Sequence record: OZ196593.1
Length of the DNA stretch: 64,000 bases
Strand: one strand, 5' to 3'
This document shows positions 22,568 to 58,419 of the stretch, piece after piece. Position 1 is the first letter of the stretch, and each line of letters starts with the position of its first letter. A model generated the notes under the pieces. It searched no databases. It had not been told where the DNA came from and saw only the letters and a program-made list of their open reading frames with translations. The position numbers were made by a program, and so were the translations under genes.

Positions 22568-22598
22568 ATTATATATACGCATCGGGTTTTGTTAAACA
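22568..22598 (-). promoter_or_regulatory. TGTTTAAC-N17-TATAAT promoter (uvsY)
   Basis: Motif recurs four times at fixed spacing. Confidence 0.75.
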
Positions 22599-22670
22599 CG
22601 AATACCCCGAATATTCCTAAGAACTCTAATATCACTAAGATGAGACGGTTTTTTTCCGCTTCGCGCCTAC

Positions 22671-22692
22671 AAAAAAAGCCCCGAAGGGCTTT
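22671..22692 (-). terminator. Terminator after gp35
   Basis: AAAGCCC-TTCG-GGGCTTTTTTT on minus strand. Confidence 0.85.
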
Positions 22693-22694
22693 AA

Positions 22695-25367
22695 TCATTT
22701 AAGTGCTACGTCAACTGCTCGTACATTGTTTTCAAAGAAGCTTGCTACTTTGACTTCAGATGCGATTGGCATACACCATTGTGTTGTGCTAGGACTCGCT
22801 GACCCTTCATCGCGACAACGAAGCATCAATATTGATGAATCACTTTTCCACTGGAAGAACTTTCTCATCGACGAGTTGTAAACACCGACGCCTTTAGAAA
22901 CCAATTTATCTGGTACATCTTCAGGGTTGACAACGCCAAAGTAGTTTCTGAATTTATCAGCAAATTCTTCGACTTGTTGTTGTGTCCAGTGATGTGGTAG
23001 TATGAATGAATCATACAAAACCCAATCATCGTTGATGTCATCCCATTGACCGTTATCTAACGCGATGTAAGTTGATGTCTCAGTTCCCGTGTAGTCAATA
23101 AGCGTATCTTGTATCCCGCTTGTGTTTCTCACACGTGCGCTGAAGTAGATATGACCGGCATCTTTACCAGATGCTTGAGCCCACATTGACACGTAATACG
23201 GTCTAGTCGGATCGATTGTCACGTAATCAAACTCAATTACGTCTTGAGTTCCCGATGACACTGTGATCATCTTCGATCTGTCAGATAACGTATGACCGCC
23301 CCATTGAACATCGCCTGCTTCTTTGATTGGCATTTCATATTCGTCATACAGATTTGAGTCTGAACGATAAGCTGAAATCCAACTATCTTGATCCATCGGA
23401 TCACCTGCAATAGGCGAATGTGCGAATCGAGAAGCAGCTAGACCGTTCAGTGACGATTGAACTGGTGCATCAAAATTAGGTGTTTCGAATCCCGCTTTAT
23501 ACACTTGAATGTAATCAACGTGGTCGTCAGATTCGATATCAGTCCATATTCCGATTGTGTGTGCGCCCGCTGGAACTTGAACATAAAATTCATGCGTTTC
23601 ATACATACCACCACCGAGTAATGGGCCGTTTTGTCGTCCGACTTCAGTATTCGTTGAGTTGTAAAATCGCAGATTGAACGTTGCTGCCGCGTCGTCATTG
23701 TCTTGTTTAGCACGGAATTTGTATATCAGATATTGCCCCTCAACAACGCCATGATCGCCTAACACGAATCGAGTGTCCGCAATCTTGTTCGTTGTCTCTA
23801 CAATAGGGCTACCGAATCCATTCACGCCAATTGTCAATCGAGATTCAAAGTTCACATCGATTTCAGCATCGCCATCACTCGGGTGGTCGAAAATGCATCG
23901 GTCTGAAATGAAACCAAGTTGAGCACTACCAAAACCCGTATAGCTGTAGCTATACTTGTCAAAGTAACTCGCACCGCGCCATTCTACCGGATTAAAGCGA
24001 CTCAGAGCAGCGTCAACGTCTGCATTTGAATAACATGACCCATTAGACACTAAAGCGAAATACTCGTCTGTGAGCGCGTTCATCGCGTTTATGAAGTTGC
24101 CGCGTTCAGCCGTGTTGTTCAAGCGATACGAGTTGTTGATTGCAGGTTCGCCTTCTGCGGTAAACGTAAACAAGTGCATTTTGCCTGTTTCTTTCGCTTC
24201 TGGGGCGAGTAAGTGCGATTCATTGATCACGCCTTCTGCAATTTCAGAACTGCCGTCAGCGACACCACGAGCATATAAACGAAGTGTGTTCGATGCACCC
24301 TCATTTAAGTGACGCGTTTCAAGACAGTTTTCCGCGATGCGAATGCCGACGGGTGCGTATACCCACAGCTCAGTGATGTTAACGTCAACACCGGGACCGG
24401 GTTGACCACTGCCGTTTGCTCGTTGAGCGCCAATAACAAACCACCAACTAGTTGAATCGACTGATCCATCACCGATTGATTGCGTGCCTGTGTTGTATTC
24501 AAGACCGCCCCATGTGCCGTATGTTGAATCTTCGCGAATTGCTTCGTAATCACGCACGCCGCCTGTATCAGCATCATAATCACCAGGGTAGTTCTTGATG
24601 ATCGGTCTGTCAGTGATGATCGGGTTCGCAATATACTGTTTGCCAGTTGGAGTTGGAGCACCAGAGCCGTATGTCAAGTACCAAAACATATTCCCTGAAT
24701 TCAGTGTATTTGGCATAGTGATACGATAGTATCTACGAACCCAACGCATTCCGTCTACTATGATGTCATTACCTGACGTTTCGAACGCATCACCATCAGT
24801 CGCAGGGGTTGAAATACCTGTTCCTGACCCGTCATACCAACGAGCATGAAACAGAGGAACACCGAGATCGTGATCGCTTTCATTCTCATACGCAACCCAA
24901 CACGACAATGTATACGTCGTATTTGGTCGTAAACGAGATTGCGGCGTGTCAAAACGATATTGATTCGTCGCGCCCGTACTACTGCGTTGTAGAATGTAAT
25001 TCGATGAACCGGGATTCGCCATTTCGACGATATCCCATGTTCCGACTATGTTGCCAACGTTCTCTGGTTGAGAGCCGTTAGCAAAGTTAGTGCCGCGCAG
25101 AAATTGACCAACGTCATGCGCAGCAAAGTTATTAGATTGACGCCAGATGTTCGTGACGTTTCTCTCAGGGTAGTGTAATTTGAACTGAAAACGTCCATCT
25201 TCACGACGAAAGTCATCAAGCCCATTTAGCGCACTGAATTTAGCTTCAATGTCGGGATCAGTCCCGACACTACGCGATTCAGCGTCTGAAGTAAACCAGA
25301 CGCCTCCAGTTGAATCATGGCGAAAAATCAGAAGATAATCGCCATCACGTTTAAGTCTTTCGTACAT
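22695..25367 (-). CDS. gp35: Long tail fibre hinge connector with N-terminal extension
   Basis: Follows gp34; GKMHLFTF..GNFINAMNALTDEYFALVSNG resembles T4 gp35 GLHLRVF..FVSFMNSLTNNRIVAILTSG. Confidence 0.7.
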   Translation of the reverse strand: MYERLKRDGDYLLIFRHDSTGGVWFTSDAESRSVGTDPDIEAKFSALNGLDDFRREDGRFQFKLHYPERNVTNIWRQSNNFAAHDVGQFLRGTNFANGSQPENVGNIVGTWDIVEMANPGSSNYILQRSSTGATNQYRFDTPQSRLRPNTTYTLSCWVAYENESDHDLGVPLFHARWYDGSGTGISTPATDGDAFETSGNDIIVDGMRWVRRYYRITMPNTLNSGNMFWYLTYGSGAPTPTGKQYIANPIITDRPIIKNYPGDYDADTGGVRDYEAIREDSTYGTWGGLEYNTGTQSIGDGSVDSTSWWFVIGAQRANGSGQPGPGVDVNITELWVYAPVGIRIAENCLETRHLNEGASNTLRLYARGVADGSSEIAEGVINESHLLAPEAKETGKMHLFTFTAEGEPAINNSYRLNNTAERGNFINAMNALTDEYFALVSNGSCYSNADVDAALSRFNPVEWRGASYFDKYSYSYTGFGSAQLGFISDRCIFDHPSDGDAEIDVNFESRLTIGVNGFGSPIVETTNKIADTRFVLGDHGVVEGQYLIYKFRAKQDNDDAAATFNLRFYNSTNTEVGRQNGPLLGGGMYETHEFYVQVPAGAHTIGIWTDIESDDHVDYIQVYKAGFETPNFDAPVQSSLNGLAASRFAHSPIAGDPMDQDSWISAYRSDSNLYDEYEMPIKEAGDVQWGGHTLSDRSKMITVSSGTQDVIEFDYVTIDPTRPYYVSMWAQASGKDAGHIYFSARVRNTSGIQDTLIDYTGTETSTYIALDNGQWDDINDDWVLYDSFILPHHWTQQQVEEFADKFRNYFGVVNPEDVPDKLVSKGVGVYNSSMRKFFQWKSDSSILMLRCRDEGSASPSTTQWCMPIASEVKVASFFENNVRAVDVALK

Positions 25368-25375
25368 AAGTCACC

Positions 25376-28300: not shown

Positions 28301-29047
28301 TACATCGCCCGGTACTGCGTGCAGTGGCAATGAGATAGCGATTGTTTTATCAGCCGCTTGAATCGCGATTGTTTCTTCACACGTAGCAACATAACCACCA
28401 TTTGCAAGGTGACCTGATTGCTGGGTCGGGTGAGCTGCGTCAATGTAAGTGTAGTACGGGTCTTGGTCGATTTGATACGTCCATGCAATACCGTTATACA
28501 CGAAATAAACTGTGCTAGACGGGCGATTCATCAACATTGTTTCGTCAGATGTTAGCGCGCCACCGATGCCGTATGATTGAATTGTCAATCCGCCAGCCGC
28601 GGCTACGGTAGTTGGGTACGCTGAAAGTACGCCTTTGCCGTCTTTAATTGTTACTGTATCGCCTGTTAGAGGCGTTTCAGGTAGTGTGATTGTAATCGAC
28701 GAACTTGCCGTCAAGAACAAGAAGTCACCTACGTTAGCACCGATAGACGAATCTACATCTTCCCACTCTGGGTCATTACGCATTTTTTTCCATTTAAGTG
28801 AATTAAACGGTTCTGCGGTAGTGATCGGGATTACGTTTTTGTATAGACGTTGATTGAACTCAACGATGAAATCTTCGTTATAGCGATCACGTGCTGGGTC
28901 ATATTCTTGAACTGTGTTTTCGTCGATGAAGTAACCTAAGTTAAGACCATCTAAGATTTCACCGATACGTGGATTCGCTACGTTTACAACGTTGCTACCA
29001 CTCGCATCAAGACCTGACGCACGAAATGCTTTGCGGAATTCTGACAT
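25376..29047 (-). CDS. gp34: Long tail fibre proximal subunit
   Basis: FRASGLDASGSNVVNVA start; repeated RRGVxEIATQxE/ITPxKL units; divergent from rnh as in T4. Confidence 0.92.
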   Translation of the reverse strand: MSEFRKAFRASGLDASGSNVVNVANPRIGEILDGLNLGYFIDENTVQEYDPARDRYNEDFIVEFNQRLYKNVIPITTAEPFNSLKWKKMRNDPEWEDVDSSIGANVGDFLFLTASSSITITLPETPLTGDTVTIKDGKGVLSAYPTTVAAAGGLTIQSYGIGGALTSDETMLMNRPSSTVYFVYNGIAWTYQIDQDPYYTYIDAAHPTQQSGHLANGGYVATCEETIAIQAADKTIAISLPLHAVPGDVVRLRDVSTNITQTRIQIGIHPTLDDQQIIHPISGVGAETITLDNIGHAELMYVGGDNNTWVIVISHEGQPWQHLGESSTAQLIVNRRYEVNINDAVAAMTITLPQSPVDGDWIELSNVKTPGKEVTVQVHPQFGDDDVGHGANEYKIVRSLDEYRMVKYSEFAATVDTFNDSFTINDEDRGYSFILFYDATRKVWDFADISSRVDIVDENHRKRPGLAKLASPTEALAHGIDYAHAEDTGDSWANQNPLKDHVITVETLDARRAAEDQVGIARVALLTTDEALEMSRVIVGGAESSRYADSAFRHDIFITPRSFNARTALENRRGVVEIATQSETRSTSNDTQVITPRKFHAAQAEEDLTGVGKLVKASDNINADGTVDSTANMRSDRTLNGTDNTVYDKTDHLRFVTAKMLDEYRATEDQPGTLWVAKSTELRINDSQVDDAIITPKKLAAWTASSTIRGISRVATLAEARATSGSGEAWDRVFITPSTLNDRTATESRRGVAEIATQTEVDTGTDSTRMIVPLKLKTWLDRDHFVTAGTDGLSHTGTIWDDVTFSIASATETQRGTLQVATQAEADSQSSPLDTVMLTPKKLNSRRATESLAGIVRLATSTEVASGSASNEIVLTPSDLTYWTRTAANSRSSESRYGTTRSATASETFVGDSTNGSSQAYTAYDRHQYAVSPYGLHYALQNYLPLNAKADDSELLDGLNSTQFARSDTDDTIGGVYTFTDNEIKIQGANPRIEFKDTTDSNSTREIYYQSGDIGFTDVENNWQFKVARNGYTNVYGGLEVDGAGMFGSSITENESSANGRSPGTGTLRTKYLGIDNMAATAAKWETARTVTFSGDLTGSVSFDGSSNVTASVQVNNNSHAHSGENITSGTVSNDRLNKASRTNKGIVQVTSDVRTSDPSSTSAEHTALSAGAGKTLSERIDLFTPDGGTGESVKYRDYIQVGSVRMSTTNQGVMEFTFGHAI

Positions 29048-29087
29048 TTCATTGCTCCTTTGTTTAGATATGCAATTCTTTATAGTA

Positions 29088-29095
29088 TATTTAGA
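29088..29095 (-). promoter_or_regulatory. Late promoter variant TCTAAATA (gp34)
   Basis: Minus strand upstream of gp34. Confidence 0.65.
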
Positions 29096-29125
29096 CTCAC
29101 GATATACACATAGGAACAAACACAC

Positions 29126-30058
29126 ATGAGTTTAGAAGGGTTTTTTAAACGAAAGACTAAAACATTTGACGGCGAGCCCGAGGGCGTCAACTTAGTTGAC
29201 TTCAGTCAAATTGTCTTGAGTTCAATCATGGCTACATATAAGCCGACTGATTTACTGACGACTGACTTAATTCGTCACATCGTTCTTAACACGCTGCGCA
29301 GCAACGTACTAAAGAACAAAATCAAATATCCGCGCATTATTCTTTGTATAGATAATGGTCATGGCGGTTACTGGCGCAAGAAGAAAGCTTGGTATTACAA
29401 GTTCAAACGTAGTTCGCAGCGTGACGAGTCGGGTTGGGATTTCGATATGATCTTTAATTCGATGGCTATCATCAAAGAAGAGATTCGTCAGAACATGCCT
29501 TACTATGTTCTTGACATCGAAGGCGTTGAAGCCGATGACCATATCGGTGTTTTGACGAAATACTACGTGAACAAAAACGTTCCAGTATTGATTACGTCTT
29601 CAGATGGTGACTTTACGCAGTTGCACACGAGCAAGCTTGTTCGTCAGTGGTCACCGATTCAGAAGAAGTGGGTAAAACCGAAGCATGGTTCGCCAGAAAT
29701 GGACATCATGTACAAGTGCATCAAGGGCGATAAGAAAGATGGCATCGCGCCTATGAAAGTGCCGAACGATCACTATACACACGGTGATGGTCGTCGCGCT
29801 CCACCGATTCGTGCAGAAGAGCTTCGAACGTTGATGACTTCTACTAAAGAAGAGCTGAAAACGTTACTTACCGATGAGCAATGGGTACGTTATGAAGAGA
29901 ACAGAGAAATGCTTGATTTCGAGTTTATCCCGCAAGATATACATGATAGCATCATTACTCAATTCGAAGAACAACGCCCTGCTCCGCGCAGTAAGTTGAT
30001 GATGTATTTTGCATCGAAAAAGCTAGATAAACTCTTGGAAAATATGAGCGAATTCTAG
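29126..30058 (+). CDS. rnh: RNase H / 5'-3' exonuclease
   Basis: LVDFSQI, EADDHIG, SSDGDFTQL, KGDKKDG. Confidence 0.95.
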   Translation: MSLEGFFKRKTKTFDGEPEGVNLVDFSQIVLSSIMATYKPTDLLTTDLIRHIVLNTLRSNVLKNKIKYPRIILCIDNGHGGYWRKKKAWYYKFKRSSQRDESGWDFDMIFNSMAIIKEEIRQNMPYYVLDIEGVEADDHIGVLTKYYVNKNVPVLITSSDGDFTQLHTSKLVRQWSPIQKKWVKPKHGSPEMDIMYKCIKGDKKDGIAPMKVPNDHYTHGDGRRAPPIRAEELRTLMTSTKEELKTLLTDEQWVRYEENREMLDFEFIPQDIHDSIITQFEEQRPAPRSKLMMYFASKKLDKLLENMSEF

Positions 30059-30068
30059 TTCAAAAACT

Positions 30069-30098
30069 TGTTTAACACGCTTCATGCTGCTGTATAAT
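30069..30098 (+). promoter_or_regulatory. TGTTTAAC-N16-TATAAT promoter (dsbA)
   Basis: Recurrent motif. Confidence 0.75.
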
Positions 30099-30144
30099 TA
30101 GCAGCATGAACACAAACACTGACTAAAACATAATTGAGGCATCA

Positions 30145-30417
30145 ATGGAAAACATCGAATACGAAACAATCTCTACTCCGCAAGACAAGCAAGAAGTTAT
30201 CAACATGATCAAAGAAGCTGCTGCGTCACTTTTACGCGCAGACTCTGAAGCTGATCTTCGTAAAGATATTGCAGCACGTGCGAAAGAAGAGTTCCAAATT
30301 CCTGCTGCTGAGTTTAACAAACTGACGCGTTGGTATCATAAACAAAACCGTGCTGAAGAGCAAGCGAAGCACGAGAAAGTTGACACACTATACGAGAAGC
30401 TATTTGACGATGAATAA
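30145..30417 (+). CDS. dsbA: dsDNA-binding protein
   Basis: MIKEAA...KDIAARAKEEF...FNKL..WYHKQ; synteny rnh-dsbA-33. Confidence 0.85.
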   Translation: MENIEYETISTPQDKQEVINMIKEAAASLLRADSEADLRKDIAARAKEEFQIPAAEFNKLTRWYHKQNRAEEQAKHEKVDTLYEKLFDDE

Positions 30418-30703
30418 AGATGACTATGTTCTCAAAGAAGAGCTTGGAAATCTAGTTCCGCCTATCAAAGGCAGCTTGAGACAGCAAATATCTCTTGAAA
30501 TCGAAGAGATCTACAATAGCTGTCCTGCTACAACTTACCTAGAAGCGTGCTTGTTTTTCATTGAGCGATACGATTACGACATTAGTCGATTCCCGTATCT
30601 GATCAATCAGACGCTGAAAGACAAAATTGAGACTGAGGCGATAAATGAAAAGACTATTAGAAGTCGATTTGGTTCTGCCTCGGACTTGGGTAAATGGGTT
30701 TAG
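30410..30703 (+). CDS. gp33: Late transcription co-activator
   Basis: SLEIEEI..TYLEAC...LKDKIETEAINEKTIR; synteny. Confidence 0.85.
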   Translation: MNKDDYVLKEELGNLVPPIKGSLRQQISLEIEEIYNSCPATTYLEACLFFIERYDYDISRFPYLINQTLKDKIETEAINEKTIRSRFGSASDLGKWV

Positions 30704-31295
30704 CATATTTCGAGTCTATTGCGCGGTAAAAGCGCATATGGGTGGGAAGTACGATATTTCCAAGTACAAACTCGGTATGAAAACACCGCAGTCTGCGTTT
30801 GAAAAGCGTTCAGACAAGGTGTTTTTCGAGCGACTAGCCAAGCGGCTAACACTGAATGATTGCTATCAGTTACTGGTGAGTAACTTGGCAGCTAATCCAA
30901 ACGCGATTTCATATGAGATTGCGGGTGCTGACGCGCATGAATTCTGGTTGAAACATACCGGATTTATGGAAATTTACAGTCAGCATTACAAAAATGAGCT
31001 ACTTACGATTTTTACTCTTATAAATAAAGAGCAAAAGAAATTCAAAGACTTGTTTAGAGGTGAGGGGCATCCAGTTATAATGCAACTCGTGTTACGAAAT
31101 ACAATCTCAATCGAGACGTTCGTAATTCTGAATAGACTTTTGAATTTTGTCCCTGTAATCGACAAAGATTACGGTGACGACATTTTTTGGCACGAGTTTA
31201 AGACGAGAGCTTTAGCATACGATAAGTTGCTGAAAATCGACGAAAAACTTGCAAAAGAAATGTTTATTCAAGTAAAAAATCAAAGTAAAATATAA
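30645..31295 (+). CDS. gp59: Helicase loader
   Basis: VKAHMGGKYDISKY, ISIETFVILN; synteny 33-59-32. Confidence 0.9.
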   Translation: MKRLLEVDLVLPRTWVNGFSIFRVYCAVKAHMGGKYDISKYKLGMKTPQSAFEKRSDKVFFERLAKRLTLNDCYQLLVSNLAANPNAISYEIAGADAHEFWLKHTGFMEIYSQHYKNELLTIFTLINKEQKKFKDLFRGEGHPVIMQLVLRNTISIETFVILNRLLNFVPVIDKDYGDDIFWHEFKTRALAYDKLLKIDEKLAKEMFIQVKNQSKI

Positions 31296-31348
31296 AACAC
31301 ACTATACGATACTATATCAAACAATAAAATACAATAAGGTAATACAAC

Positions 31349-32257
31349 ATGACTATGTTTAAGCGCAAATCACCAGCAAAACTTCAAGAAAAACTTGAGC
31401 AAATGAGCACCAAAAAGTCTTACGACAACGCTGACGAGTGGAAACTTTCTACTGATAAGCTTGGTAACGGCTCTGCTGTGATTCGCTTCCTTCCTGCTAA
31501 AGGCGAAGACGACCTACCATTCGTAAAAATCTTCACTCACGGTTTCAAAGAAAACGGCAACTGGTTCATCGAAGCTTGTCCAAGCACTATCGATCTTCCA
31601 TGTCCATGCTGTGCAGCTAACGGCGAGCTTTGGAAAACTGAGAACGAAGACAATCAAAACATTGCACGTAAGCGCAAGCGTACTCTTTCTTACTGGGCAA
31701 ACGTATACATCATCAAAGATGAAGCGAACCCAGAAAACGAAGGCAAGACATTCAAATACCGCTTCGGTAAGAAAATTCTTGACAAGATCACTCAAGCAGC
31801 TCAAGCAGACGACGACCTAGGTGTACCTGGTATGGACGTAACTTGTGTGTTTGACGGTGCTAACTTCTCTCTAAAAGCGAAGAAAGTATCTGGTTTCCCT
31901 AACTACGACGACTCTAAATTTGGTCCAAGCACTGAGCTTTGCGGCGGTGACGAAACTAAACTTGGCGAAATCTGGGAAGCGATGCACGATCTAAACGCTA
32001 TCATCGCTCCATCAGCGTTCAAATCTGAAGCTGATTTGCAAAAACGCTTCTTACAAGTGACTGGTGCTCAGACTCCAAAAGCGTCTGCTGCTCAAAATCT
32101 TGAAGCGCAAATCAACACTTCAGCGCCTGCTCAAGCTAACGCTCAAAAGCCGGCAACTCAATCTGCTCCAGCGAAAGTTGAAGTTGACGAGCCGCTGAAA
32201 GACTCAAGCGACGACGAACTAGACGCATTACTTGCGGATCTAGAACTAGACGGCTAG
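31349..32257 (+). CDS. gp32: Single-stranded DNA-binding protein
   Basis: MFKRKSP, GNGSAVIRFLP, HGFK..WFIEACP...CPCC, acidic tail. Confidence 0.97.
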   Translation: MTMFKRKSPAKLQEKLEQMSTKKSYDNADEWKLSTDKLGNGSAVIRFLPAKGEDDLPFVKIFTHGFKENGNWFIEACPSTIDLPCPCCAANGELWKTENEDNQNIARKRKRTLSYWANVYIIKDEANPENEGKTFKYRFGKKILDKITQAAQADDDLGVPGMDVTCVFDGANFSLKAKKVSGFPNYDDSKFGPSTELCGGDETKLGEIWEAMHDLNAIIAPSAFKSEADLQKRFLQVTGAQTPKASAAQNLEAQINTSAPAQANAQKPATQSAPAKVEVDEPLKDSSDDELDALLADLELDG

Positions 32258-32267
32258 AACGAATGAG

Positions 32268-32285
32268 AGGGGCTTTCGAGCCCCT
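32268..32285 (+). terminator. UUCG hairpin after gp32
   Basis: AGGGGCT-TTCG-AGCCCCT; weak U tract. Confidence 0.55.
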
Positions 32286-32304
32286 TGGTTCTCTAGGAGA
32301 GTCT

Positions 32305-32844
32305 ATGAAAGTTCAAATCGTTTTTGCTCACGCTATGAGTAAATCGCAACACGCTCCATTCGGCAACAAAAACTCACTCCCATGGAAACACAACAAAGAA
32401 GATCTATCTTTCTTCAAACGAATCACCGCTAATAGCGTTCTTGTAATGGGTTCTAACACGTTTGAATCTTTACCCGGTAAACTAGTCGGACGTCCGCATA
32501 TAGTGCGCTCACGCTCTAATACAGCTACAGCACGCAATGGTGAACGCGCAGACTTTTATACTTCAATGCATTTTACAGATCTTATCGAAGATTTGACGAA
32601 TGAATACGGTGAAGACTACGACACAATAAGCGTAATTGGTGGGCCAGAGGTTATATTTTCAGCACTGCGATATGCAGACTGCATATATAAAACTACGATA
32701 GCTGAAAAAATCGAAGCGTACGACGTTACGATTGATTTGACTAAAGTATTTTGCTCTTTTCCACAATCGGAAAAACTAGAAATAACAGAGTGCGAAAACG
32801 GCTCGGTTATTTTCATTGAGAAGTTAACAAAAGGTGATATATGA
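32305..32844 (+). CDS. frd: Dihydrofolate reductase
   Basis: LPWKHNKEDLSFFK, VMGSNTFESLP, VIGGPEV. Confidence 0.9.
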   Translation: MKVQIVFAHAMSKSQHAPFGNKNSLPWKHNKEDLSFFKRITANSVLVMGSNTFESLPGKLVGRPHIVRSRSNTATARNGERADFYTSMHFTDLIEDLTNEYGEDYDTISVIGGPEVIFSALRYADCIYKTTIAEKIEAYDVTIDLTKVFCSFPQSEKLEITECENGSVIFIEKLTKGDI

Positions 32845-33578
32845 TTTTTAAAAGTAATGTTGGTTGGTTTGCAGGCGCGGGTTCTGTTCGTCACGATTTT
32901 TACATCAACGGGCCAATCGAAGAGCCAAATGATTACGAAGAAATGCTTCAGATTCTGCATACAGCTTCTGAAACAGACGCAATCTATTTGCACTTGAACA
33001 CACCCGGTGGTAACTTCGCGGCAGCATGTCAAATCTGTGATGCGATTATGCAATCAAAAGCAGGTGCAGTAATTGCATGTGCTGAAGGGGATGTTTGCAG
33101 TGCAGGCACAATGATTTTCCTAGCTTGTAATGGCTGGCACGTGAGTCCGTTTAGTACGTTCATGTTCCATACTTCAAGCGGCGGTCAAATCGGTAAAATG
33201 CCTGACACGTTGAAGCAAGCGAAAGCGCACGAAGAACACTTGAATCGCGTAGCAGGTTTGCTATACGACCCGTTCTTCAGCGAAGACGAAATCGATCAAA
33301 TCATCAACTACAACCAAGACGTTTGGTTGACGCCTGAAGAAGTAACTGAGCGTCTAACTGAAATGTCGAAGCGTTTCGAAGCTGAACTAAAAGAAGCTGA
33401 AGAACAAATTGCAGGTGATTTGGAATCTCAACTTGAAGAACAGATCGCAGAACGAGTAGAAGCGGGCGTGAAAGCTGCGCTAGAAGCTCTGAAGCCAGTC
33501 GAAGTTCAAGAAGCTGTTGAAGCTATTGAGCCAGAAGAAGTTCCGTACGAACCTCGCGAAGTGGCAGAAGACGAGTAA
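32841..33578 (+). CDS. ClpP-family serine protease-like protein
   Basis: LHLNTPGG, VCSAGTMIFL (Ser), FMFH (His); acidic C-terminal tail. Confidence 0.8.
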   Translation: MIFKSNVGWFAGAGSVRHDFYINGPIEEPNDYEEMLQILHTASETDAIYLHLNTPGGNFAAACQICDAIMQSKAGAVIACAEGDVCSAGTMIFLACNGWHVSPFSTFMFHTSSGGQIGKMPDTLKQAKAHEEHLNRVAGLLYDPFFSEDEIDQIINYNQDVWLTPEEVTERLTEMSKRFEAELKEAEEQIAGDLESQLEEQIAERVEAGVKAALEALKPVEVQEAVEAIEPEEVPYEPREVAEDE

Positions 33579-33637
33579 TCAAATTGAGAATAAGGGGTGG
33601 CTTTTGTCGCTCCTTTTGTTTTTAGAAAAGGTAAAAT

Positions 33638-34738
33638 ATGTCAGATTTAATGAAATCGATGAAGAAATCAAGCACTTCTGGTTACGCTCACGTACTGTCT
33701 GAGAGTAACTTCATGTTTGAAAAAGATCACACTCGAACGTACGTTCCTGCGATTAACATCGCGTTTAGTGGCGAAGTAGATGGTGGCTTAACGTCGGGGC
33801 TTACAGTTCTTGCGGGTCCGTCAAAGCACTTCAAATCGAATCTAGGTCTAGTTGGCGTTGCCGCATACTTGAAGAAGTACCCCGACGCAATTTGTGTGTT
33901 CATCGACACTGAATTCGGTATCACACCTGCTTACTTGAAATCTCAAGGCGTTGACCCTGAGCGTGTGCTACACATTCAATGTGAGTCAGTTGAGCGAATG
34001 AAGTTCGAAATGGCGAATCAGCTTAAAGATCTTGCTGAACGTAAACGTGCGATGAAAAAAGGCGATGAGCCAGACCGTGTTGTGTTCTTCATTGACTCGG
34101 TTGGTAACGTAGCATCAGCGAAAGAAATCGAAGACGCGCAGAACGAATCTAGCAAAGCAGATATGACGCGTGCAAAACAACTTAAATCACTGTTCCGTAT
34201 TGTAACACCGTACTTCACGATGCTTGACATTCCGTGTATTGCGATTAACCATACGTATCAGACTCAAGAAATGTACGCTAAAACTGTCATGAGTGGCGGT
34301 ACGGGTATCATGTACTCTGCTGATACAGTAATCATCTTGGGTAAACAGCAAGAAAAAGACGGCAAAGAAATTGTCGGCTATCACTTCATCATGAATATCG
34401 AGAAGTCTCGATTCGTTAAAGAAAAGATGAAAATTCCGTTGACAGTAACGTACGAAGATGGCATCGACCCGTTCAGTGGTCTACTAGATATCGCGTTGCA
34501 GACTGGACACGTTGTCAAACCGTCAAACGGTTGGTATCAGCGTTCATTTGTCGATTTGGAAACAGGCGAGCAAACGGTAGAAGAAAAGAAATATCGTGCT
34601 AAAGAGACGCAAGCAGCGTCATTCTGGAAGCCTATCATCAATGACGAGTCATTCAAAGATGGCGTTAAGCGTCTTTACTGTCTTGGTCAAATGAACGAAG
34701 ACGATATCATGGAAGAAGTGGAAAGCTTGTTCGAATAA
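33638..34738 (+). CDS. uvsX: RecA-like recombinase
   Basis: AGPSKHFKS, FFIDSVGN, MSGGTGIMYSAD, NIEKSRFVKEK. Confidence 0.97.
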   Translation: MSDLMKSMKKSSTSGYAHVLSESNFMFEKDHTRTYVPAINIAFSGEVDGGLTSGLTVLAGPSKHFKSNLGLVGVAAYLKKYPDAICVFIDTEFGITPAYLKSQGVDPERVLHIQCESVERMKFEMANQLKDLAERKRAMKKGDEPDRVVFFIDSVGNVASAKEIEDAQNESSKADMTRAKQLKSLFRIVTPYFTMLDIPCIAINHTYQTQEMYAKTVMSGGTGIMYSADTVIILGKQQEKDGKEIVGYHFIMNIEKSRFVKEKMKIPLTVTYEDGIDPFSGLLDIALQTGHVVKPSNGWYQRSFVDLETGEQTVEEKKYRAKETQAASFWKPIINDESFKDGVKRLYCLGQMNEDDIMEEVESLFE

Positions 34739-34743
34739 TCAAG

Positions 34744-34767
34744 AAGCCGCTTTTAGCGGCTTTTTTT
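34744..34767 (+). terminator. Terminator after uvsX
   Basis: AAGCCGC-TTTTA-GCGGCTTTTTTT. Confidence 0.85.
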
Positions 34768-34780
34768 ATAGGTAAAATAT

Positions 34781-35080
34781 ATGACTCCGAATGAAGTAAG
34801 CGAAATTCTGACTGGAATTAACGAACACGTTAAATTTAGTATCTTAATTGATGATGTTGAAGTTTATGTGACAGGGATTATCGTTGATAATAGCGGTAGA
34901 CTTAAAGTTGAGTTTGTTACTCAACACCCCGAGCGTGAAGACGAAGTTCGTCCACACGTAGAGGCATGTATTATGAAACTTATTAGTGAAGAACAGAAAA
35001 AAAGTGAGGCGACGCAATGCAAATCGAACAGTCGATTTTCTCGAATCTTATCGAAAATCAAGAATATTATGCAACGGTAA
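34781..35080 (+). CDS. gp40: Head vertex assembly chaperone
   Basis: Between uvsX and 41; VYVTG...LKVEF...PHVEACI. Confidence 0.7.
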   Translation: MTPNEVSEILTGINEHVKFSILIDDVEVYVTGIIVDNSGRLKVEFVTQHPEREDEVRPHVEACIMKLISEEQKKSEATQCKSNSRFSRILSKIKNIMQR

Positions 35081-36420
35081 TACCGCATCTTAAAAAAGAG
35101 TATTTCCCGTCAGTAGCATATCAGCATGTATTCTCGATGATTAAGAATCACGGTGACGAGTATAAGCGACGTGCAACGCTCGAAGTATTAAAGGTTGGTC
35201 TAGAATCACTAAACGGTATCAGTGAATACGATTACGCTGAGATTCAGCAAATTATCTCGAATCTTGAACCACATCCGACGCACGACTTGCGCTGGTTAGT
35301 AGACGAAACAGAAAAATACTGCATTGAGCAAAGCACGTTCAATGCATTAAGTGAAGCACTTGCAATTCAAGAAAACGCAGCAAAACCATTTGATCAGCAA
35401 AACAAGAAAATGAAAACAATCGGGGCGATTCCCGATATGATGCGCGAAGCATTATCAGTCTGTTTTGATACATCAGTGGGTCATGATTACTTTGCTGATT
35501 GGGAACCGCGCTACAAATCATACATTGAGAAAGCAGCAAAGCTCCCGTTCAAGCTAAACATCTTGAACAAAATTACACAAGGTGGCATCGAGCGAAGCAC
35601 GTTGAATCTTCTTCTAGCGGGTTCTAACGTCGGTAAATCACTTGCACTATGTCACTTAGCAACTGAATACTTACTACAAGGCTACAACGTTCTGTACATC
35701 AGTATGGAAATGAGTGAAGCGGCAGTGTCTAAACGTATCGATGCGAACTTGATGGACGTCAGTATGGACGACTTCGACACGATTACCGAAAAGACATACG
35801 GCAATAAGATTCAGAATCTTGAGAAGAAAACTCAAGGCAAGTTATTCATTAAACAGTTCCCGACTGCGGGTGCGAACGTTACTCACTTCAACACATTGAT
35901 GAATGAGCTTCGTACGAAGAAAGACGTTGTTCCCGACATTGTTATTATCGATTATCTTGGTATCTGTGCGTCGTCACGTGTAGCAAGCTCAGAAAACACA
36001 TACGTTCACGTTAAAGCAATCGCTGAAGAGATTCGTGGTTTTGCTGTTGAGCACAACGTCGGTGTATGGTCTGCTGCTCAGACAACGCGTTCAGCATGGG
36101 ATGCGTCTGATATGGGAATGGGAGACATTGCAGAATCTGCGGGTCTAGCTCACACGGCTGACTTGATTCTCGGTGTCATGGAAACTGAAGAAACGGTTGC
36201 ACTCGGACAGCAACGTGTCAAACAAATCAAGTCACGTTATGCAGATCGGAATCAAGATCAAACGTTCATGATTGCAGTTAACAAAGGCAAACAAAGATGG
36301 GGTGATGTAGATGGAACAGCAAATTACGCTGCGCCTGCGTCGATACAAGCGAAATCGGCGTCTCCTTTTAACCAGAAAAAAGAGCAAACGTCTGAGAAGA
36401 CAGAGGCGGTAAATTGGTAG
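35017..36420 (+). CDS. gp41: Replicative DNA helicase
   Basis: AGSNVGKS, ISMEMSE, IIDYLGIC, WSAAQTTR, IKSRY. Confidence 0.97.
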   Translation: MQIEQSIFSNLIENQEYYATVIPHLKKEYFPSVAYQHVFSMIKNHGDEYKRRATLEVLKVGLESLNGISEYDYAEIQQIISNLEPHPTHDLRWLVDETEKYCIEQSTFNALSEALAIQENAAKPFDQQNKKMKTIGAIPDMMREALSVCFDTSVGHDYFADWEPRYKSYIEKAAKLPFKLNILNKITQGGIERSTLNLLLAGSNVGKSLALCHLATEYLLQGYNVLYISMEMSEAAVSKRIDANLMDVSMDDFDTITEKTYGNKIQNLEKKTQGKLFIKQFPTAGANVTHFNTLMNELRTKKDVVPDIVIIDYLGICASSRVASSENTYVHVKAIAEEIRGFAVEHNVGVWSAAQTTRSAWDASDMGMGDIAESAGLAHTADLILGVMETEETVALGQQRVKQIKSRYADRNQDQTFMIAVNKGKQRWGDVDGTANYAAPASIQAKSASPFNQKKEQTSEKTEAVNW

Positions 36421-36659
36421 AGATTATAGGCTCTAAGTATTGTCTAGCGTGCGTGAAGATTTGCGAACGTCTAGACAAACGTGGCGTCGAGTATACATTT
36501 CTCGACGCGTTCAAACCCACCGAGCGATATCGCGTCTTGCAGAAGATTGGTGAAGATGATGGCTACATTCACCATCCGATTGGGTTTATTAATGGTGAGT
36601 GTATTGGTAGCGGTATGAGTATTCTTAATCATATCGACAAGTTTTTAGAAGAGGAATAG
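36414..36659 (+). CDS. Glutaredoxin-like protein
   Basis: YCLAC CxxC, PIGFINGECIG; next to nrdD. Confidence 0.8.
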   Translation: MVEIIGSKYCLACVKICERLDKRGVEYTFLDAFKPTERYRVLQKIGEDDGYIHHPIGFINGECIGSGMSILNHIDKFLEEE

Positions 36660-38492
36660 ATGAAAGACGAAATTTTAGATATTGTTAGTGGTTCTGGTAA
36701 CAACAAAGAAAACGCAAACAAAGATTCAAAAGTAATCCCGACAATGCGTGACTTGGTAGCAGGTACAGTATCGAAACAATATGCACTTGAAGACATATTG
36801 CCGAAAGAGATTGCCGACGCTCATATCAGCGGTGACATTCACTTTCACGATTTAGATTACAGTCCGCTGTTCCCGCAATTCAACTGCATGATCATCGATA
36901 TCAAAGGCATGTTTGAACATGGTTTTAAAATGGGTAACGCTGAAATCACAGAGCCGAATAGCATTTCGACTGCTGCGACTATCGTAACTCAGATTATTCA
37001 ACAAGTGTCTAGTCACATCTATGGCGGTAACACGATTAACCGCATTGATGAAGTGCTTGCACCGTATGTTCGCAAATCGTACTACAAATGGCTTGAAATC
37101 GGTCGCGAAGAACATCCCGACTCTGATTCGAAAGCTGCTATCTTCGCCCGTAAGCGCGTAGAGAAAGAAACGTACGACGCGTTCCAGACGTTTGAGTATC
37201 AAGTTAACACTATGCAGACATCGAATGGTCAAACGCCATTCACGACTATCAACTTCGGTCTTGGTACATCTTGGGAAGAGAAGCTAATTCAAAAAAGCAT
37301 TCTTCAGAATCGTATTGATGGTCTAGGTAAGACGCGCAAGACTGCGATTTTCCCTAAGCTTGTGTTCACGCTGCGCGATGGTGTCAATCTGAAACAAGGT
37401 GACCCGTGTTACGGCATCAAGAAGCTTGCTCTTGAATGTGCGAGTAAACGCATGTATCCCGACGTTCTGAACTACGACCGATTAGTCGAAACGACTGGTG
37501 GCTTTAAAGCACCAATGGGTTGTCGCTCGTTCTTAGGCGAATACGAAGAAAACGGTGAAGTGATTCACGATGGTCGAAACAATCTTGGCGTTGTGTCAGT
37601 GAACGTTCCGCGTATCGCGATTGAAGCAAGTGGCGACTTGGAAAGATTCTTTGAAATCTTACATGACCGCTGCACGATTGCGTTTGATGCTCTAATGCTG
37701 CGTATAAAGCGTTTTGACGACGTTAAAGCGTCAGTTGCACCGATTCTATACACAGAAGGCGCAATGGGCGTACGATTGAATCCAGACGACAATGTAAGCG
37801 AAGTGTTCAAGAACGGTCGAGCAAGTATCTCACTTGGTTACATCGGGTTGCACGAAGCTGTTACGCTATTGTCTCATGACAAAGAATCACATACGTTCAA
37901 TTCGCATCACAAACAGTTCTTAGCTGAGAAGATCGTCGAGACGTTGCGCCAGTACACTGATATGTGGAAAGAAGCAACTGGTTACGGTTTCAGCTTGTAT
38001 AGCACACCGAGCGAATCGCTTTGTGATCGTTTCTGTCGTCTCGATCAAGAGAAATACGGTGTTATTCAAGGCATCAATGACAAAGACTACTACACGAACT
38101 CGTTCCACTTAGATGTGTTCAAGAAAGTGAATCCGTTTGAGAAGATTGACTTTGAATCGCGATACCCTCAACACGCAAGTGGCGGTTTCATCGTTTACGC
38201 TGAGTTCCCGAACATGCGTGACAACTTGAAAGGTCTTGAGCGCGTATGGGATTACTCGTACACTCGCGTGCCGTACTTCGGTACTAACACGCCAATCGAT
38301 CAGTGTACGTGTGGTTGGTCTGGTGAAGCACATGCAGATTCGGATGGGTTCAGTTGTCCTACGTGTGGCGAACGCGACCCTGAGAAACTTCACGTGACTC
38401 GTCGAGTCTGTGGCTATCTCGGTAACCCGGGTGCTCGTGGTTGGAATCACGGCAAGACAGTTGAAATGAAAAATCGAGTTAAACACCAATAA
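36660..38492 (+). CDS. nrdD: Anaerobic (class III) ribonucleotide reductase
   Basis: HFHDLDY, MGCRSFL, TPSESLC, RVCGYLG glycyl-radical motif. Confidence 0.97.
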   Translation: MKDEILDIVSGSGNNKENANKDSKVIPTMRDLVAGTVSKQYALEDILPKEIADAHISGDIHFHDLDYSPLFPQFNCMIIDIKGMFEHGFKMGNAEITEPNSISTAATIVTQIIQQVSSHIYGGNTINRIDEVLAPYVRKSYYKWLEIGREEHPDSDSKAAIFARKRVEKETYDAFQTFEYQVNTMQTSNGQTPFTTINFGLGTSWEEKLIQKSILQNRIDGLGKTRKTAIFPKLVFTLRDGVNLKQGDPCYGIKKLALECASKRMYPDVLNYDRLVETTGGFKAPMGCRSFLGEYEENGEVIHDGRNNLGVVSVNVPRIAIEASGDLERFFEILHDRCTIAFDALMLRIKRFDDVKASVAPILYTEGAMGVRLNPDDNVSEVFKNGRASISLGYIGLHEAVTLLSHDKESHTFNSHHKQFLAEKIVETLRQYTDMWKEATGYGFSLYSTPSESLCDRFCRLDQEKYGVIQGINDKDYYTNSFHLDVFKKVNPFEKIDFESRYPQHASGGFIVYAEFPNMRDNLKGLERVWDYSYTRVPYFGTNTPIDQCTCGWSGEAHADSDGFSCPTCGERDPEKLHVTRRVCGYLGNPGARGWNHGKTVEMKNRVKHQ

Positions 38493-43070: not shown

Positions 43071-43093
43071 TAGGGGCGTTTTCGCCCCTTTTT
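43071..43093 (+). terminator. Terminator
   Basis: AGGGGCG-TTTT-CGCCCCTTTTT. Confidence 0.8.
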
Positions 43094-43095
43094 AA

Positions 43096-43126
43096 TGTTT
43101 AACGTTCGTGAAACTCGTGTGATAAT
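43096..43126 (+). promoter_or_regulatory. TGTTTAAC-N17-GATAAT promoter (primase)
   Basis: Recurrent motif. Confidence 0.7.
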
Positions 43127-43145
43127 GTTCACAAGAGGATATATT

Positions 43146-44213
43146 ATGCAAATACTGATTGATATACAATACGCAAAAATGCTACAGCACCGATTGTTAT
43201 TACCAAAAGTACATAGTAATCGTCCCTTCAAAATAAATGCTCGTTGTCCCGTATGCGGTGACTCGAAAAAGAACAAATACAAGACTCGTTTTTGGATCAA
43301 TGAAGTGAAGACAAAAGCAGGTGAAGTTCATCTTCGCTGTAGTTGTTGGAACTGTGATTTGAATGTGTCGTTGTTTCAGTTTCTGAAAGATCACGAGCCG
43401 TCATTATTCTCGCAATATCGTGTTGATCTGTTCAAAGAGAGGAATTCCCGTGAAAGAAAGGAAAGACCGCCTGAACCTGTTAAAGAGAATGCAGCAAATG
43501 CAGCGCCTGTTGTCGTTGAGAAAGAGCAAGAAGAGCAGCTTTTCCACAACATCACCGCGCTAAAAGAAGGTCATGTGTTGCACAAGTATCTTGACTCGCG
43601 CAAAATCCCACATGACAAATGGCATTTACTCGGCTTTACTCGTGGCTGGTCACAGATGGCGAAGACATTACGCCCCGATTTATATGAGGGCGAGATTCGT
43701 CAAGATCACCCGCGTCTCGTGATTCCGATATACAACAAAGATGGGTTGGTGGCAGTGCAAGGTCGTGCTTTGACTAACAAGCACGCGCAGCGTTACATGA
43801 CCATCAAAATCGACGACGATTTCAACAAAATCTACGGTACTGAGCGAATCAATGAAGACGACGACGTTATTTTCGTTGAGGGCCCAATTGATAGTTTATT
43901 CCTATACAATTGTTGTGCTATCGTAGGTGGACAAGTAAGTCCGCAGAACGCACCATACGCGGGTCATCGCATATGGGCACTTGATAATGAACCGCGACAT
44001 CCCGATGTAGTGAAGCGTATGCAGTCACTTATCAAAGCAGGTGAGCGTGTAGTTATCTGGGATAAACTCCCGCCTGTAATTGCAGGCAAGAAAGATATTA
44101 ACGACTTCGTGAAAGCGGGCGTTAATGCTGAGTTCATTCAGCAATACATTTATGACAACGCAGTAAGCGGCTTGATCGCTACTAATAGATTAAACAGATG
44201 GAAGAAAATTTAA
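43146..44213 (+). CDS. gp61: DNA primase
   Basis: RCPVCGDS...CWNC zinc ribbon, EGPIDSLF, DNEPR, KDIND. Confidence 0.96.
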   Translation: MQILIDIQYAKMLQHRLLLPKVHSNRPFKINARCPVCGDSKKNKYKTRFWINEVKTKAGEVHLRCSCWNCDLNVSLFQFLKDHEPSLFSQYRVDLFKERNSRERKERPPEPVKENAANAAPVVVEKEQEEQLFHNITALKEGHVLHKYLDSRKIPHDKWHLLGFTRGWSQMAKTLRPDLYEGEIRQDHPRLVIPIYNKDGLVAVQGRALTNKHAQRYMTIKIDDDFNKIYGTERINEDDDVIFVEGPIDSLFLYNCCAIVGGQVSPQNAPYAGHRIWALDNEPRHPDVVKRMQSLIKAGERVVIWDKLPPVIAGKKDINDFVKAGVNAEFIQQYIYDNAVSGLIATNRLNRWKKI

Positions 44214-57533: not shown

Positions 57534-57568
57534 AAAGGGTTGCATTGTGCAGCCCTTTTTAGTATCAT
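57534..57568 (+). promoter_or_regulatory. Terminator hairpin with embedded promoter
   Basis: AAAAGGGTTGCA-TTG-TGCAGCCCTTTTT; TTGCAT-N17-TATCAT. Confidence 0.7.
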
Positions 57569-57592
57569 GAGCATTCAATTCAAGGAGTGCTT

Positions 57593-57805
57593 ATGTCTAT
57601 TTTATTAACTGCGCTTGGCGCAACTCTGGGTGTTATCGTGATTGTGTTATCTGCATACCCGTTATGTCGAACACTCGACAACATTTTTGAAGATCGTTTT
57701 AGTAGTGATGCAGCGGCAATGACATGCTTTGTGCTTGCACTTTCTATTTTCATCTTCGCCTTTATGCTAGTCGTTTTGGCTGGTGCAGAATACTTTCCAT
57801 TGTGA
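57593..57805 (+). CDS. Small membrane protein
   Basis: Two hydrophobic helices. Confidence 0.55.
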   Translation: MSILLTALGATLGVIVIVLSAYPLCRTLDNIFEDRFSSDAAAMTCFVLALSIFIFAFMLVVLAGAEYFPL

Positions 57806-57813
57806 GGAATACT

Positions 57814-58395
57814 ATGAAAAAGACAATTATTTTTGATGTAGATGGCGTACTAATCGATTGGGCAAGCCAACTACCGTTATTCTGCAAGCGATGCGGTATC
57901 GACCCCGTGCTTGCACTGAAACACTTCACAGCTAAAGAGCACGTTGACGTTCGCGACCTATTCGGTATCGAGCAGAAATACATCGCGTTCGAGCTGCTAG
58001 ACAAATACAATCTAGAGCACGGTAAGTACATGACTGCTTTCCCAGATGCTGTAGACCACATTCACAAGCTTGCGAAAGAGTACAACTTGATTGCACTGAC
58101 GAAGTTCGGTGATACAACTGAGCACTGGTTAACTCGCAAGTTCAATCTTGAGACGTTCTTCCCTGGGTTGTTCAGTGAGCTGATCACAATTCGCGGTGAC
58201 GAATCGAAGATTGGTTACGTTGCTGCAATTCAAGCAGAACATGACGTGGTAGCATTCGTCGATGACCAACTTGAGAACATCGAAGCAATCAAACGAGCAA
58301 ATGGTGTGCTGACCGTCCATATGAATCGATACGATGAACGTGCAGACGTTAAACACATGAGCGATATGATGTCTTTCATTGAAAACAATGTTTAA
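57814..58395 (+). CDS. HAD-family protein, T4 gp30.2-like
   Basis: FDVDGVLIDWASQLP, FVDDQ; resembles T4 30.2 TDIDGVCLSWQSGLP. Confidence 0.8.
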   Translation: MKKTIIFDVDGVLIDWASQLPLFCKRCGIDPVLALKHFTAKEHVDVRDLFGIEQKYIAFELLDKYNLEHGKYMTAFPDAVDHIHKLAKEYNLIALTKFGDTTEHWLTRKFNLETFFPGLFSELITIRGDESKIGYVAAIQAEHDVVAFVDDQLENIEAIKRANGVLTVHMNRYDERADVKHMSDMMSFIENNV

Positions 58396-58419
58396 CACAT
58401 AGCGATTCGATTATATAAT
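58389..58419 (+). promoter_or_regulatory. TGTTTAAC-N17-TATAAT promoter (ligase operon)
   Basis: Recurrent motif. Confidence 0.7.

What the first reader, a model, noticed from the sequence alone, without database searches (positions are those of the whole stretch)
22568..58419. Distinct promoter class TGTTTAAC-N16/17-(T/G)ATAAT in front of replication and recombination genes
Seen: the exact 8-mer TGTTTAAC lies 16-17 nt upstream of a -10 hexamer at four sites: uvsY (22568-22598, minus), dsbA-33-59-32 (30069-30098), primase-dut-dexA (43096-43126) and the ligase operon (58389-58419). Small early genes instead use TTG(A/C)xx-N17-TAATAT/TATATT. Known: these gene groups are largely middle-mode (MotA/AsiA-dependent) in T4, and no MotA box is evident here. 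The motif also resembles the T4 early -35 GTTTAC. Inference: a separate, possibly activator-dependent middle transcription class.
Basis: partly seen in the sequence, partly recalled or inferred. Interest (0 to 1): 0.65.

Follow-up and report, generated by a model that had tools for sequence, protein, structure and literature searches.

The report
T4-early-type promoter family in a vibriophage
The four TGTTTAAC sites are real, conserved promoters, but they are the best-matching members of a family of about 35-40 host-type (sigma-70) promoters that look like phage T4's early promoters, not T4's activator-dependent middle promoters.

Summary
The window is the first 64 kb of a KVP40-like Vibrio phage (K566/K567 type).

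TGTTTAAC-N16/17-(T/G)ATAAT occurs four times, against 0 in shuffles. Each site lies in an intergenic gap before uvsY, dsbA-33-59-32, gene 61-dut-dexA or the ligase operon.

- **Not a closed class.** The conserved core is GTTTA placed 19 nt before a TAnnnT hexamer. There are 33 such sites at that spacing and about 2 at any other. The count at spacings 18 and 19 together is 38, against 3.4 +/- 2.1 in shuffles. The family consensus is TGTTTAA(a/c), so the four sites are its perfect-consensus tip.
- **Other members.** They precede rnh, 32, 43, nrdA, tk, phoH, gene 1, the tRNA cluster and the asiA operon.
- **Conservation.** KVP40 and phage 1.081.O keep GTTTA and the -10 at all four places, but not the full 8-mer.
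- **Resemblance to T4.** Sequence and geometry equal T4 early promoters (GTTTAC-N18-TATAAT). The same scan recovers those in T4 and also recovers mapped T4 MotA promoters. No MotA geometry, MotA domain or sigma region 4 is found in this phage. AsiA is present.
It is the published PeSL promoter-terminator cassette and precedes ORFans.

Two promoter families and their split by gene type are supported. A middle or activator-dependent mode is neither supported nor excluded.

The parts
22568..22598 (-). uvsY promoter: TGTTTAAC, 17-nt spacer, TATAAT; predicted start near 22561
   Evidence: GTTTA and the -10 are conserved in KVP40 and 1.081.O. The generic sigma-70 scan gives 11/12 as TTAACA-16-TATAAT.
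30069..30098 (+). dsbA-33-59-32 promoter: TGTTTAAC, 16-nt spacer, TATAAT; predicted start near 30105
43096..43126 (+). gene 61-dut-dexA promoter: TGTTTAAC, 17-nt spacer, GATAAT preceded by TGT (extended -10); predicted start near 43133
58389..58419 (+). Ligase-operon promoter: TGTTTAAC, 17-nt spacer, TATAAT; predicted start near 58426
   Evidence: The generic sigma-70 scan gives 11/12.
29062..29091 (+). Further family member before rnh (GTTTAG-N18-TATATT)
   Evidence: Nearly identical in 1.081.O; the KVP40 record starts too close to it for comparison.
31262..31291 (+). Further family member before gene 32 (GTTTAT-N18-TAAAAT)
   Evidence: Conserved in KVP40 and 1.081.O.
22675..22692 (-). Intrinsic terminator ending the tail-fibre transcript, upstream of the uvsY promoter
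   Evidence: Fold energy -12.0 kcal/mol, z -3.6.
22599..22664 (-). Upstream module between the terminator and the uvsY -35: a small inverted repeat, an invariant 14-mer (22635-22648), then TTAG/TTCG every 9 nt
   Evidence: Five copies in this genome, four in KVP40 and six in 1.081.O; none for the reversed control pattern.
43072..43089 (+). Intrinsic terminator. Five T's follow the stem and the -35 box starts 6 nt after it
   Evidence: Fold energy -14.3 kcal/mol.
58420..58437 (+). Intrinsic terminator starting 1 nt after the -10 of the ligase-operon promoter
   Evidence: Fold energy -9.1 kcal/mol. Conserved in three lineages.
30081..30110 (+). 12-bp inverted repeat whose loop is exactly the dsbA -10 hexamer
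   Evidence: Fold energy -18.5 kcal/mol, z -6.65. The arms are kept in KVP40 and 1.081.O, with one change on both sides.
62960..62989 (+). Example of the other family (GGTTGCA-N17-TAATAT), before alc. Others end at 38566, 45830, 49170 and 57568
   Evidence: The type is described as PeSL in PMC4122927.
63033..63551 (+). Alc homologue
   Evidence: Pfam ALC, E = 3.5e-23. The model's C-terminal domain aligns weakly to the T4 MotA C-terminal domain, Z 6.9.
61175..62869 (-). Alt-like RNA polymerase ADP-ribosyltransferase gene, by annotation only
   Evidence: Record annotation; not tested here.

Best explanation
The four sites are the perfect-consensus members of a genome-wide family of about 35-40 promoters with the form T(-37)GTTTAA(-31), an 18-nt gap, then TAtAAT.

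Inferred mechanism: the host's sigma-70 RNA polymerase reads them directly. Sigma region 4 contacts the GTTTA box, which in one register is a TTGACA variant (TTAACA), and region 2 contacts the -10. This is the schizo-T4 version of the T4 early promoter (GTTTAC at -36 to -31).

These promoters are the resident promoters of conserved prereplicative operons: replication, recombination, nucleotide metabolism, tRNAs and asiA. Each usually sits just after a terminator, so that each operon is insulated and restarted.

A second family, GGTTG(A/C) boxes that are often built into a terminator hairpin, is the mobile PeSL cassette that comes with ORFans.

Shown here: the existence, geometry, conservation, gene association and T4 likeness of the family. 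Inferred: direct recognition by the host polymerase and prereplicative timing.
For: - **Spacing.** GTTTA is followed by TAnnnT (at most 1 mismatch to TATAAT) 33 times at spacing 19, against about 2 at each other spacing from 8 to 32. The count at spacings 18 and 19 together is 38, against 3.4 +/- 2.1 (maximum 10) in 100 shuffles.
- **Unbiased scan.** A pentamer-and-offset scan upstream of -10-like hexamers ranks GTTTA at offset 19 first and GGTTG/GTTGC next.
- **Placement.** 27 of 38 sites have a co-oriented ORF start from 66 nt upstream to 160 nt downstream of the -10. The background rate is 17.6%, binomial p = 6e-13.
- **Consensus.** The frequency matrix gives T at -37 in 27 of 33 sites and A at -31 in 17 of 33, so the consensus is TGTTTAA(a/c).
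- **Conservation.** GTTTA and the -10 are identical in KVP40 and 1.081.O at all four sites, while the spacers diverge. The gene 32 and rnh sites are also conserved.
- **T4 control.** The same scan on T4 bases 1-20000 gives GTTTA at 19 and TTTAC at 18 as the top signals. It finds six GTTTAC-N18 sites, five of them just upstream of early genes: rIIA.1, motB, srd, modB and mrh.2. This matches the published T4 early -35, GTTTAC at -36 to -31 (PMC1524935).
- **Generic scan.** It scores the uvsY and ligase sites 11/12, the best in their regions.
- **No phage reader.** The phage has no sigma region 4 domain. Only gp55 weakly hits region 2.
Against: - There is no transcript data of any kind; no RNA run was listed.
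- The phage has AsiA (Pfam E = 4.8e-36). In T4, AsiA blocks use of the -35, and the family lacks a consistent TGn extended -10. Some way of keeping replication genes on after AsiA appears is still unexplained.
- The invariant G at -36 and the T at -37 lie outside the canonical sigma-70 hexamer.
- The two families differ at several linked positions. That is what separately regulated classes would also show.
Confidence: 0.68

Rival explanations
1. The GTTTA family is a true middle class. After AsiA remodels sigma-70 region 4, an unidentified phage DNA-binding protein (a functional analogue of MotA) binds TGTTTAA at about -34 and recruits the polymerase. This is sigma appropriation with a different box.
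For: - AsiA is present without MotA.
- The literature notes that KVP40 AsiA co-activates with T4 MotA in vitro, and that KVP40 may have a functional MotA analogue (PMC2988021).
- The family is enriched before genes that are middle-mode in T4.
- G at -36 and T at -37 are conserved outside the sigma-70 hexamer.
- The C-terminal domain of the Alc homologue aligns to the T4 MotA C-terminal domain at ranks 2-3 of 48,161 chains (Z 6.9, 97-105 residues aligned).
Against: - The box lies at -37 to -30, about 4 bp upstream of a MotA box, and coincides exactly with the T4 early -35. That element needs no activator (PMC2988021).
- Two sites are 11/12 sigma-70 matches.
- A family member heads the operon that contains asiA, and several precede tRNA genes.
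- Z 6.9 is within the range that the tool itself calls a common arrangement. It would be a property of the whole Alc family, not of this phage.
- Foldseek placed MotA only at rank 36, E = 0.25.
- The 243-aa protein next to asiA gave no usable model (pLDDT 37).
Confidence: 0.12
2. Host sigma-70 polymerase reads both families without a DNA-binding activator, but they differ in timing or strength. The difference would come from their response to polymerase modification, either Alt-type ADP-ribosylation of the alpha subunit or AsiA. The GTTTA family would then persist into the replication period while PeSL promoters fade, or the reverse.
For: - An Alt-like gene is annotated at 61175-62869 and AsiA is present.
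- PMC1524935 links the T at -33 of T4 early promoters to the ADP-ribosylated alpha subunit.
- The families differ at -37, at -33 and in the -10.
Against: - It rests only on analogy with T4.
- The T4 review states that no single promoter position explains the Alt effect (PMC2988021).
- The linked differences could simply reflect the common descent of PeSL cassettes.
Confidence: 0.17
3. The four matches are chance similarities without promoter function.
For: The 8-mer alone is only about twofold enriched. Generic promoter scans find no more hits than shuffles do.
Against: - The composite pattern gives 4 matches against 0 in shuffles.
- There is a sharp spike at one spacing.
- The sites are placed before co-oriented genes.
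- The two boxes are conserved while the spacers diverge.
Confidence: 0.02

Closest known systems
Phage T4 early promoters (GTTTAC at -36 to -31, about 18 nt, TATAAT; read by host sigma-70 polymerase)
   Same: Same core (GTTTA), same distance to the -10 and same position before prereplicative genes. The same scan finds both. PMC1524935 reports that predicted early promoters of RB69, RB49, RB43, 44RR and Aeh1 also resemble GTTTAC.
   Different: - Position -31 is mostly A, not C, and T at -37 is strongly preferred.
- There is no consistent TGn and only a weak A/T-rich upstream region.
- In this phage the family coexists with a second, GGTTG-type family.
T4 MotA/AsiA-dependent middle promoters (MotA box TGCTTtA centred at -30, 12 +/- 1 bp from the -10)
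   Same: A good -10; placement before replication and recombination genes; asiA is present in the genome; TGTTTAA loosely resembles TGCTTTA.
   Different: - The box sits about 4 bp further upstream.
- TGCTT shows no spacing spike in this phage, KVP40 or 1.081.O, whereas in T4 the same test recovers the mapped starts P56/69 (16813), PrIIB1 (377) and PrIIB2 (122).
- No MotA domain is encoded.
PeSL promoter-terminator cassettes of KVP40 and nt-1 (TTGYVH-N17-TAWWAT with an A3-4G3-loop-C3T3-4 stem; Comeau, Arbiol and Krisch 2014, PMC4122927)
   Same: It has the same consensus and the same stem, and it precedes small ORFans.
   Different: The four sites of the finding have no stem-loop between the boxes, a different -35 and a different -10, and they precede conserved genes.

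Membership tests
T4-type early promoter | GTTTAC-like box at -36 to -31 | tested here: met
   GTTTA is invariant at the four sites in three lineages. It is the top-ranked pentamer genome-wide. Position -31 is A in 17 of 33 sites rather than C.
T4-type early promoter | Fixed distance (18 nt after the hexamer) to a TAtAAT -10 | tested here: met
   33 sites at that spacing, against about 2 elsewhere. The geometry is identical in the T4 control.
T4-type early promoter | TGn extended -10 and an A/T-rich UP element (the 'uber' promoter of PMC2988021) | tested here: inconclusive
   Only the gene 61 site has TGn. The matrix shows no strong TG at -15/-14 and only mild A/T richness from -40 to -55.
T4-type early promoter | Co-oriented placement before prereplicative genes | tested here: met
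   27 of 38 sites, p = 6e-13. Downstream genes include rnh, 32, 43, 61, nrdA, tk, gene 1, tRNAs and the asiA operon.
T4-type early promoter | Use by unmodified host polymerase immediately after infection | not testable with these tools
   No RNA run was listed.
MotA-dependent middle promoter | MotA box TGCTTtA 12 +/- 1 bp from the -10 | tested here: not met
   No TGCTT spike at spacings 13-15 (counts 2, 0, 0). The T4 positive control works.
MotA-dependent middle promoter | motA gene in the genome | tested here: not met
   Pfam MotA_activ and MotCF: no six-frame match at E <= 10 in the 255-kb record.
MotA-dependent middle promoter | asiA gene in the genome | tested here: met
   PF09010, E = 4.8e-36, at 195298-195591 of the K566 record.
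PeSL cassette | G3-loop-C3 stem-loop joined to a TTGYVH -35 and a TAWWAT -10 | tested here: not met
   Absent from the four sites and from all 27 stricter GTTTA-family sites. Present in 11 of 26 GTTG-family sites.

The most novel reading that the evidence does not exclude
KVP40-like phages keep AsiA because they do practise sigma appropriation. On this reading the TGTTTAA box is the target of a non-homologous MotA analogue, possibly a protein with a MotA-like double-wing domain such as the Alc homologue. That would make the GTTTA family a second, independently evolved middle-promoter system.
Probability: 0.1. Interest if true: 0.75.

Novelty: new member of a known kind. Interest (0 to 1): 0.3.

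Why it matters
From my memory of its abstract, the KVP40 genome paper reported no recognisable early or middle transcription signals; that paper was not held in the library. Later work described only the PeSL promoters (PMC4122927).

A defined, conserved GTTTA-N18-TAnAAT family gives schizo-T4 vibriophages a usable promoter map. It shows that the T4 early -35 signature is ancestral across distant T4 relatives. It also corrects two gene calls.

The question left open by Hinton's review is why these phages have AsiA without MotA (PMC2988021). There are now two sequence-defined promoter sets whose response to AsiA can be compared directly. The finding itself is incremental.

Tried and rejected
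1. **RNA evidence.** One search for sequencing runs with window 29000-38000 listed none.
2. **Candidate MotA analogue by position.** The 243-aa protein just upstream of asiA (K566 194565-195296) occupies roughly the place of motA in T4.
   - It has no Pfam family, only a PHROG of unknown function.
   - It has no PDB sequence match.
   - Only seven close homologues were found.
   - The AlphaFold model had pLDDT 37, and the ESM Atlas gave nothing above 0.84. This lead went nowhere.
3. **Alc homologue as a MotA-like protein.**
   - The model is good (pLDDT 82).
   - Foldseek gave no match at E <= 0.001. The top hits were type III chaperone/YbjN folds, and MotA came at rank 36.
   - VIA-align gave the MotA C-terminal domain Z 6.9 at ranks 2-3, within the range the tool calls non-decisive. 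I treat this only as a lead.
4. **Annotated T4 promoters as a training set.** The T4 record carries no promoter features. I used spacing scans and the start sites printed in PMC2988021 instead.
5. **KVP40 genome paper.** PMC180978 is not held.
6. **Transcriptome of a KVP40-like phage.** Two literature searches found none.
7. **Whole genome of the window.** None is held. I rebuilt it from the public K566 record. That record differs from the window at 7 bases between about 58.2 and 58.45 kb, none of them inside the promoter.
Full report
**Identity of the DNA**

The window matches Vibrio phage K566 and K567 at 100% over a 6-kb probe, starting at base 1 of those records. It differs from K566 at 7 of 64,000 bases.

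These are KVP40-like (Schizotequatrovirus) T4 relatives of about 255 kb. No whole genome is held for the window. I therefore fetched the K566 record in six pieces, substituted the window for its first 64 kb, and used that as the genome.

- rnh, dsbA, 33, 59 and 32
- 61, dut and dexA
- gene 30 (ligase)
- uvsY

**The observation**

The composite pattern has four matches, against none in 100 shuffles. These are the only strict matches in the whole genome.

Each lies in a gap, co-oriented with the next gene. Three are next to an intrinsic terminator:
- Upstream of the uvsY promoter, at 22675-22692.
- Just before the gene 61 -35 box, at 43072-43089. Five T's follow the stem and the box starts 6 nt after it.
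- Starting 1 nt after the -10 of the ligase-operon promoter, at 58420-58437.

**What the motif belongs to**

An unbiased scan counted every pentamer at every offset upstream of -10-like hexamers in non-coding, gene-proximal positions. It ranked GTTTA at offset 19 first and GGTTG/GTTGC second.

GTTTA followed by TAnnnT occurs 33 times at spacing 19, against about 2 at each other spacing from 8 to 32. Spacings 18 and 19 together give 38, against 3.4 +/- 2.1 in shuffles. Of these 38 sites, 27 have a co-oriented ORF start close downstream, against a background of 17.6%.

The frequency matrix gives T at -37 (27 of 33), GTTTA, A at -31 (17 of 33) and A or C at -30.

Other members precede these genes:
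- rnh (29091) and gene 32 (31291)
- the nrdH-24-55 operon (64615) and gene 43 (77901)
- two GTP cyclohydrolase genes and queC
- tk (135768) and nrdA (181048)
- phoH (193395)
- the operon that contains asiA (194512)
- the tRNA cluster (217078-217451, minus strand)
- gene 1 (222776, minus strand)

The full 8-mer in the same geometry, with a weaker -10, also precedes tk, tRNA genes and wac.

**Conservation**

At all four sites, KVP40 (about 82% identical) and phage 1.081.O (about 78%) keep GTTTA and the -10 hexamer at the same distance, while the spacers diverge. The flanking letters of the 8-mer vary: TGTTTACA, TGTTTAGA, TGTTTATC and AGTTTAAT in KVP40. The gene 32 and rnh sites and the PeSL-type sites are also positionally conserved.

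**Comparison with T4, run with the same scripts**

On T4 bases 1-20000, GTTTA at 19 and TTTAC at 18 are the top signals. Six GTTTAC-N18-TAnnAT sites appear, five of them just before early genes: rIIA.1, motB, srd, modB and mrh.2. This agrees with the published early -35, GTTTAC at -36 to -31 (PMC1524935).

In T4 the MotA core TGCTT spikes at spacings 13-14. Predicted starts at 16813, 377 and 123 match the mapped middle promoters P56/69 (16813), PrIIB1 (377) and PrIIB2 (122) of PMC2988021. The test therefore has a working positive control.

In K566, KVP40 and 1.081.O, TGCTT shows no spike at those spacings.

Protein domains in the K566 record:
- The Pfam MotA domains are absent at E <= 10.
- AsiA is present.
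- No sigma region 4 domain is encoded. Only gp55 weakly matches region 2.

A -35 box can therefore be read only by the host sigma factor or by an unknown DNA-binding protein.

A generic sigma-70 scan reads TGTTTAACA as TTAACA with a 16-nt spacer. It scores the uvsY and ligase sites 11 of 12, the best in their regions.

**The second family**

It recurs at many places.

This is the PeSL promoter-terminator cassette published for KVP40 and nt-1, with promoter consensus TTGYVH-N17-TAWWAT and stem A3-4G3-loop-C3T3-4 (PMC4122927).

The two families differ at linked positions, -37 and the -10 hexamer. They also differ in what follows them: annotated genes in 16 of 24 GTTTA sites against 1 of 19 PeSL-type sites, p = 4e-5. 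The labels are mine, taken from the record annotation. The one annotated gene behind a PeSL-type promoter is alc (62989).

**Interpretation**

- The step to a middle, activator-dependent class is not supported. The box has the sequence and position of an element that in T4 needs no activator, two sites are near-perfect sigma-70 promoters, and a member drives the asiA operon.
- That step is not excluded either. AsiA without MotA remains unexplained (PMC2988021), and the family lacks a consistent extended -10 that would make it independent of the -35.
- I looked for a candidate activator. The protein next to asiA gave nothing.
- The C-terminal domain of the Alc homologue aligns to the MotA double-wing domain at Z 6.9. 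The tool itself rates that level as non-decisive.

**Earlier notes of this scan**

- One note (s1-157961) had already described, on other DNA of this phage group, the module of hairpin plus 9-nt repeats that I met upstream of uvsY. I confirmed its copy numbers but not its proposed role as an origin.
- Another note (s1-161664) had called the 172-aa protein an Alc homologue with a loose MotA-like C-terminal domain. My Pfam result and fold search agree.

Noticed in passing
window 30081-30110: A 12-bp inverted repeat flanks the dsbA -10 so that TATAAT is exactly the loop (-18.5 kcal/mol, z -6.65). The arms are kept in KVP40 and 1.081.O, with one change on both sides (CATG..CATG against CGTG..CACG). 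It could be an operator over the -10, or a hairpin in read-through RNA from rnh. It has no T-run.
   Followed up: partly
window 58414-58442: The terminator hairpin and its run of seven T's begin 1 nt after the -10 of the ligase-operon promoter, in all three lineages. Transcripts from upstream should stop here. Transcripts from this promoter would start at the 3' end of the left arm and so escape termination. This is a compact insulator-restart arrangement.
   Followed up: partly
window 22599-22664 (-) and 64513-64590 (+); K566 108930, 158420, 222887: A module of about 100 nt: a small inverted repeat (CGGAA..TTCCG), an invariant 14-mer CCGTCTCATCTTAG, then five to seven units with TTAG/TTCG every 9 nt. 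It is always co-oriented with the next gene and usually lies between a terminator and a promoter. The genes are uvsY, nrdH-24-55, gene 1, a lipoprotein gene and one ORFan. T4's oriF is at the uvsY promoter (from my own knowledge).
   Followed up: partly
window 43095-43146 and 22546-22698: Two likely gene-call errors in the public K566 record. The primase CDS is drawn from 43095, inside the promoter; the KVP40 gene 61 start corresponds to 43147, which has a GAGG ribosome-binding site. The 50-aa 'hypothetical protein' at 22546-22698 covers the uvsY promoter and the repeat module and is not annotated in KVP40.
   Followed up: partly
window 63033-63551: An Alc homologue sits in a phage that, from my memory of the KVP40 paper, does not modify cytosine. 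The genome does carry queC, queE-like and GTP cyclohydrolase genes, which would fit a 7-deazaguanine DNA modification, so Alc may tell host DNA from phage DNA by another mark. Its C-terminal domain model aligns weakly with the MotA double-wing domain (Z 6.9).
   Followed up: partly
K566 record 195599-195892: The gene just after asiA matches the Thoeris anti-defence Tad2-like domain (PF11195, E = 1.7e-25).
   Followed up: no
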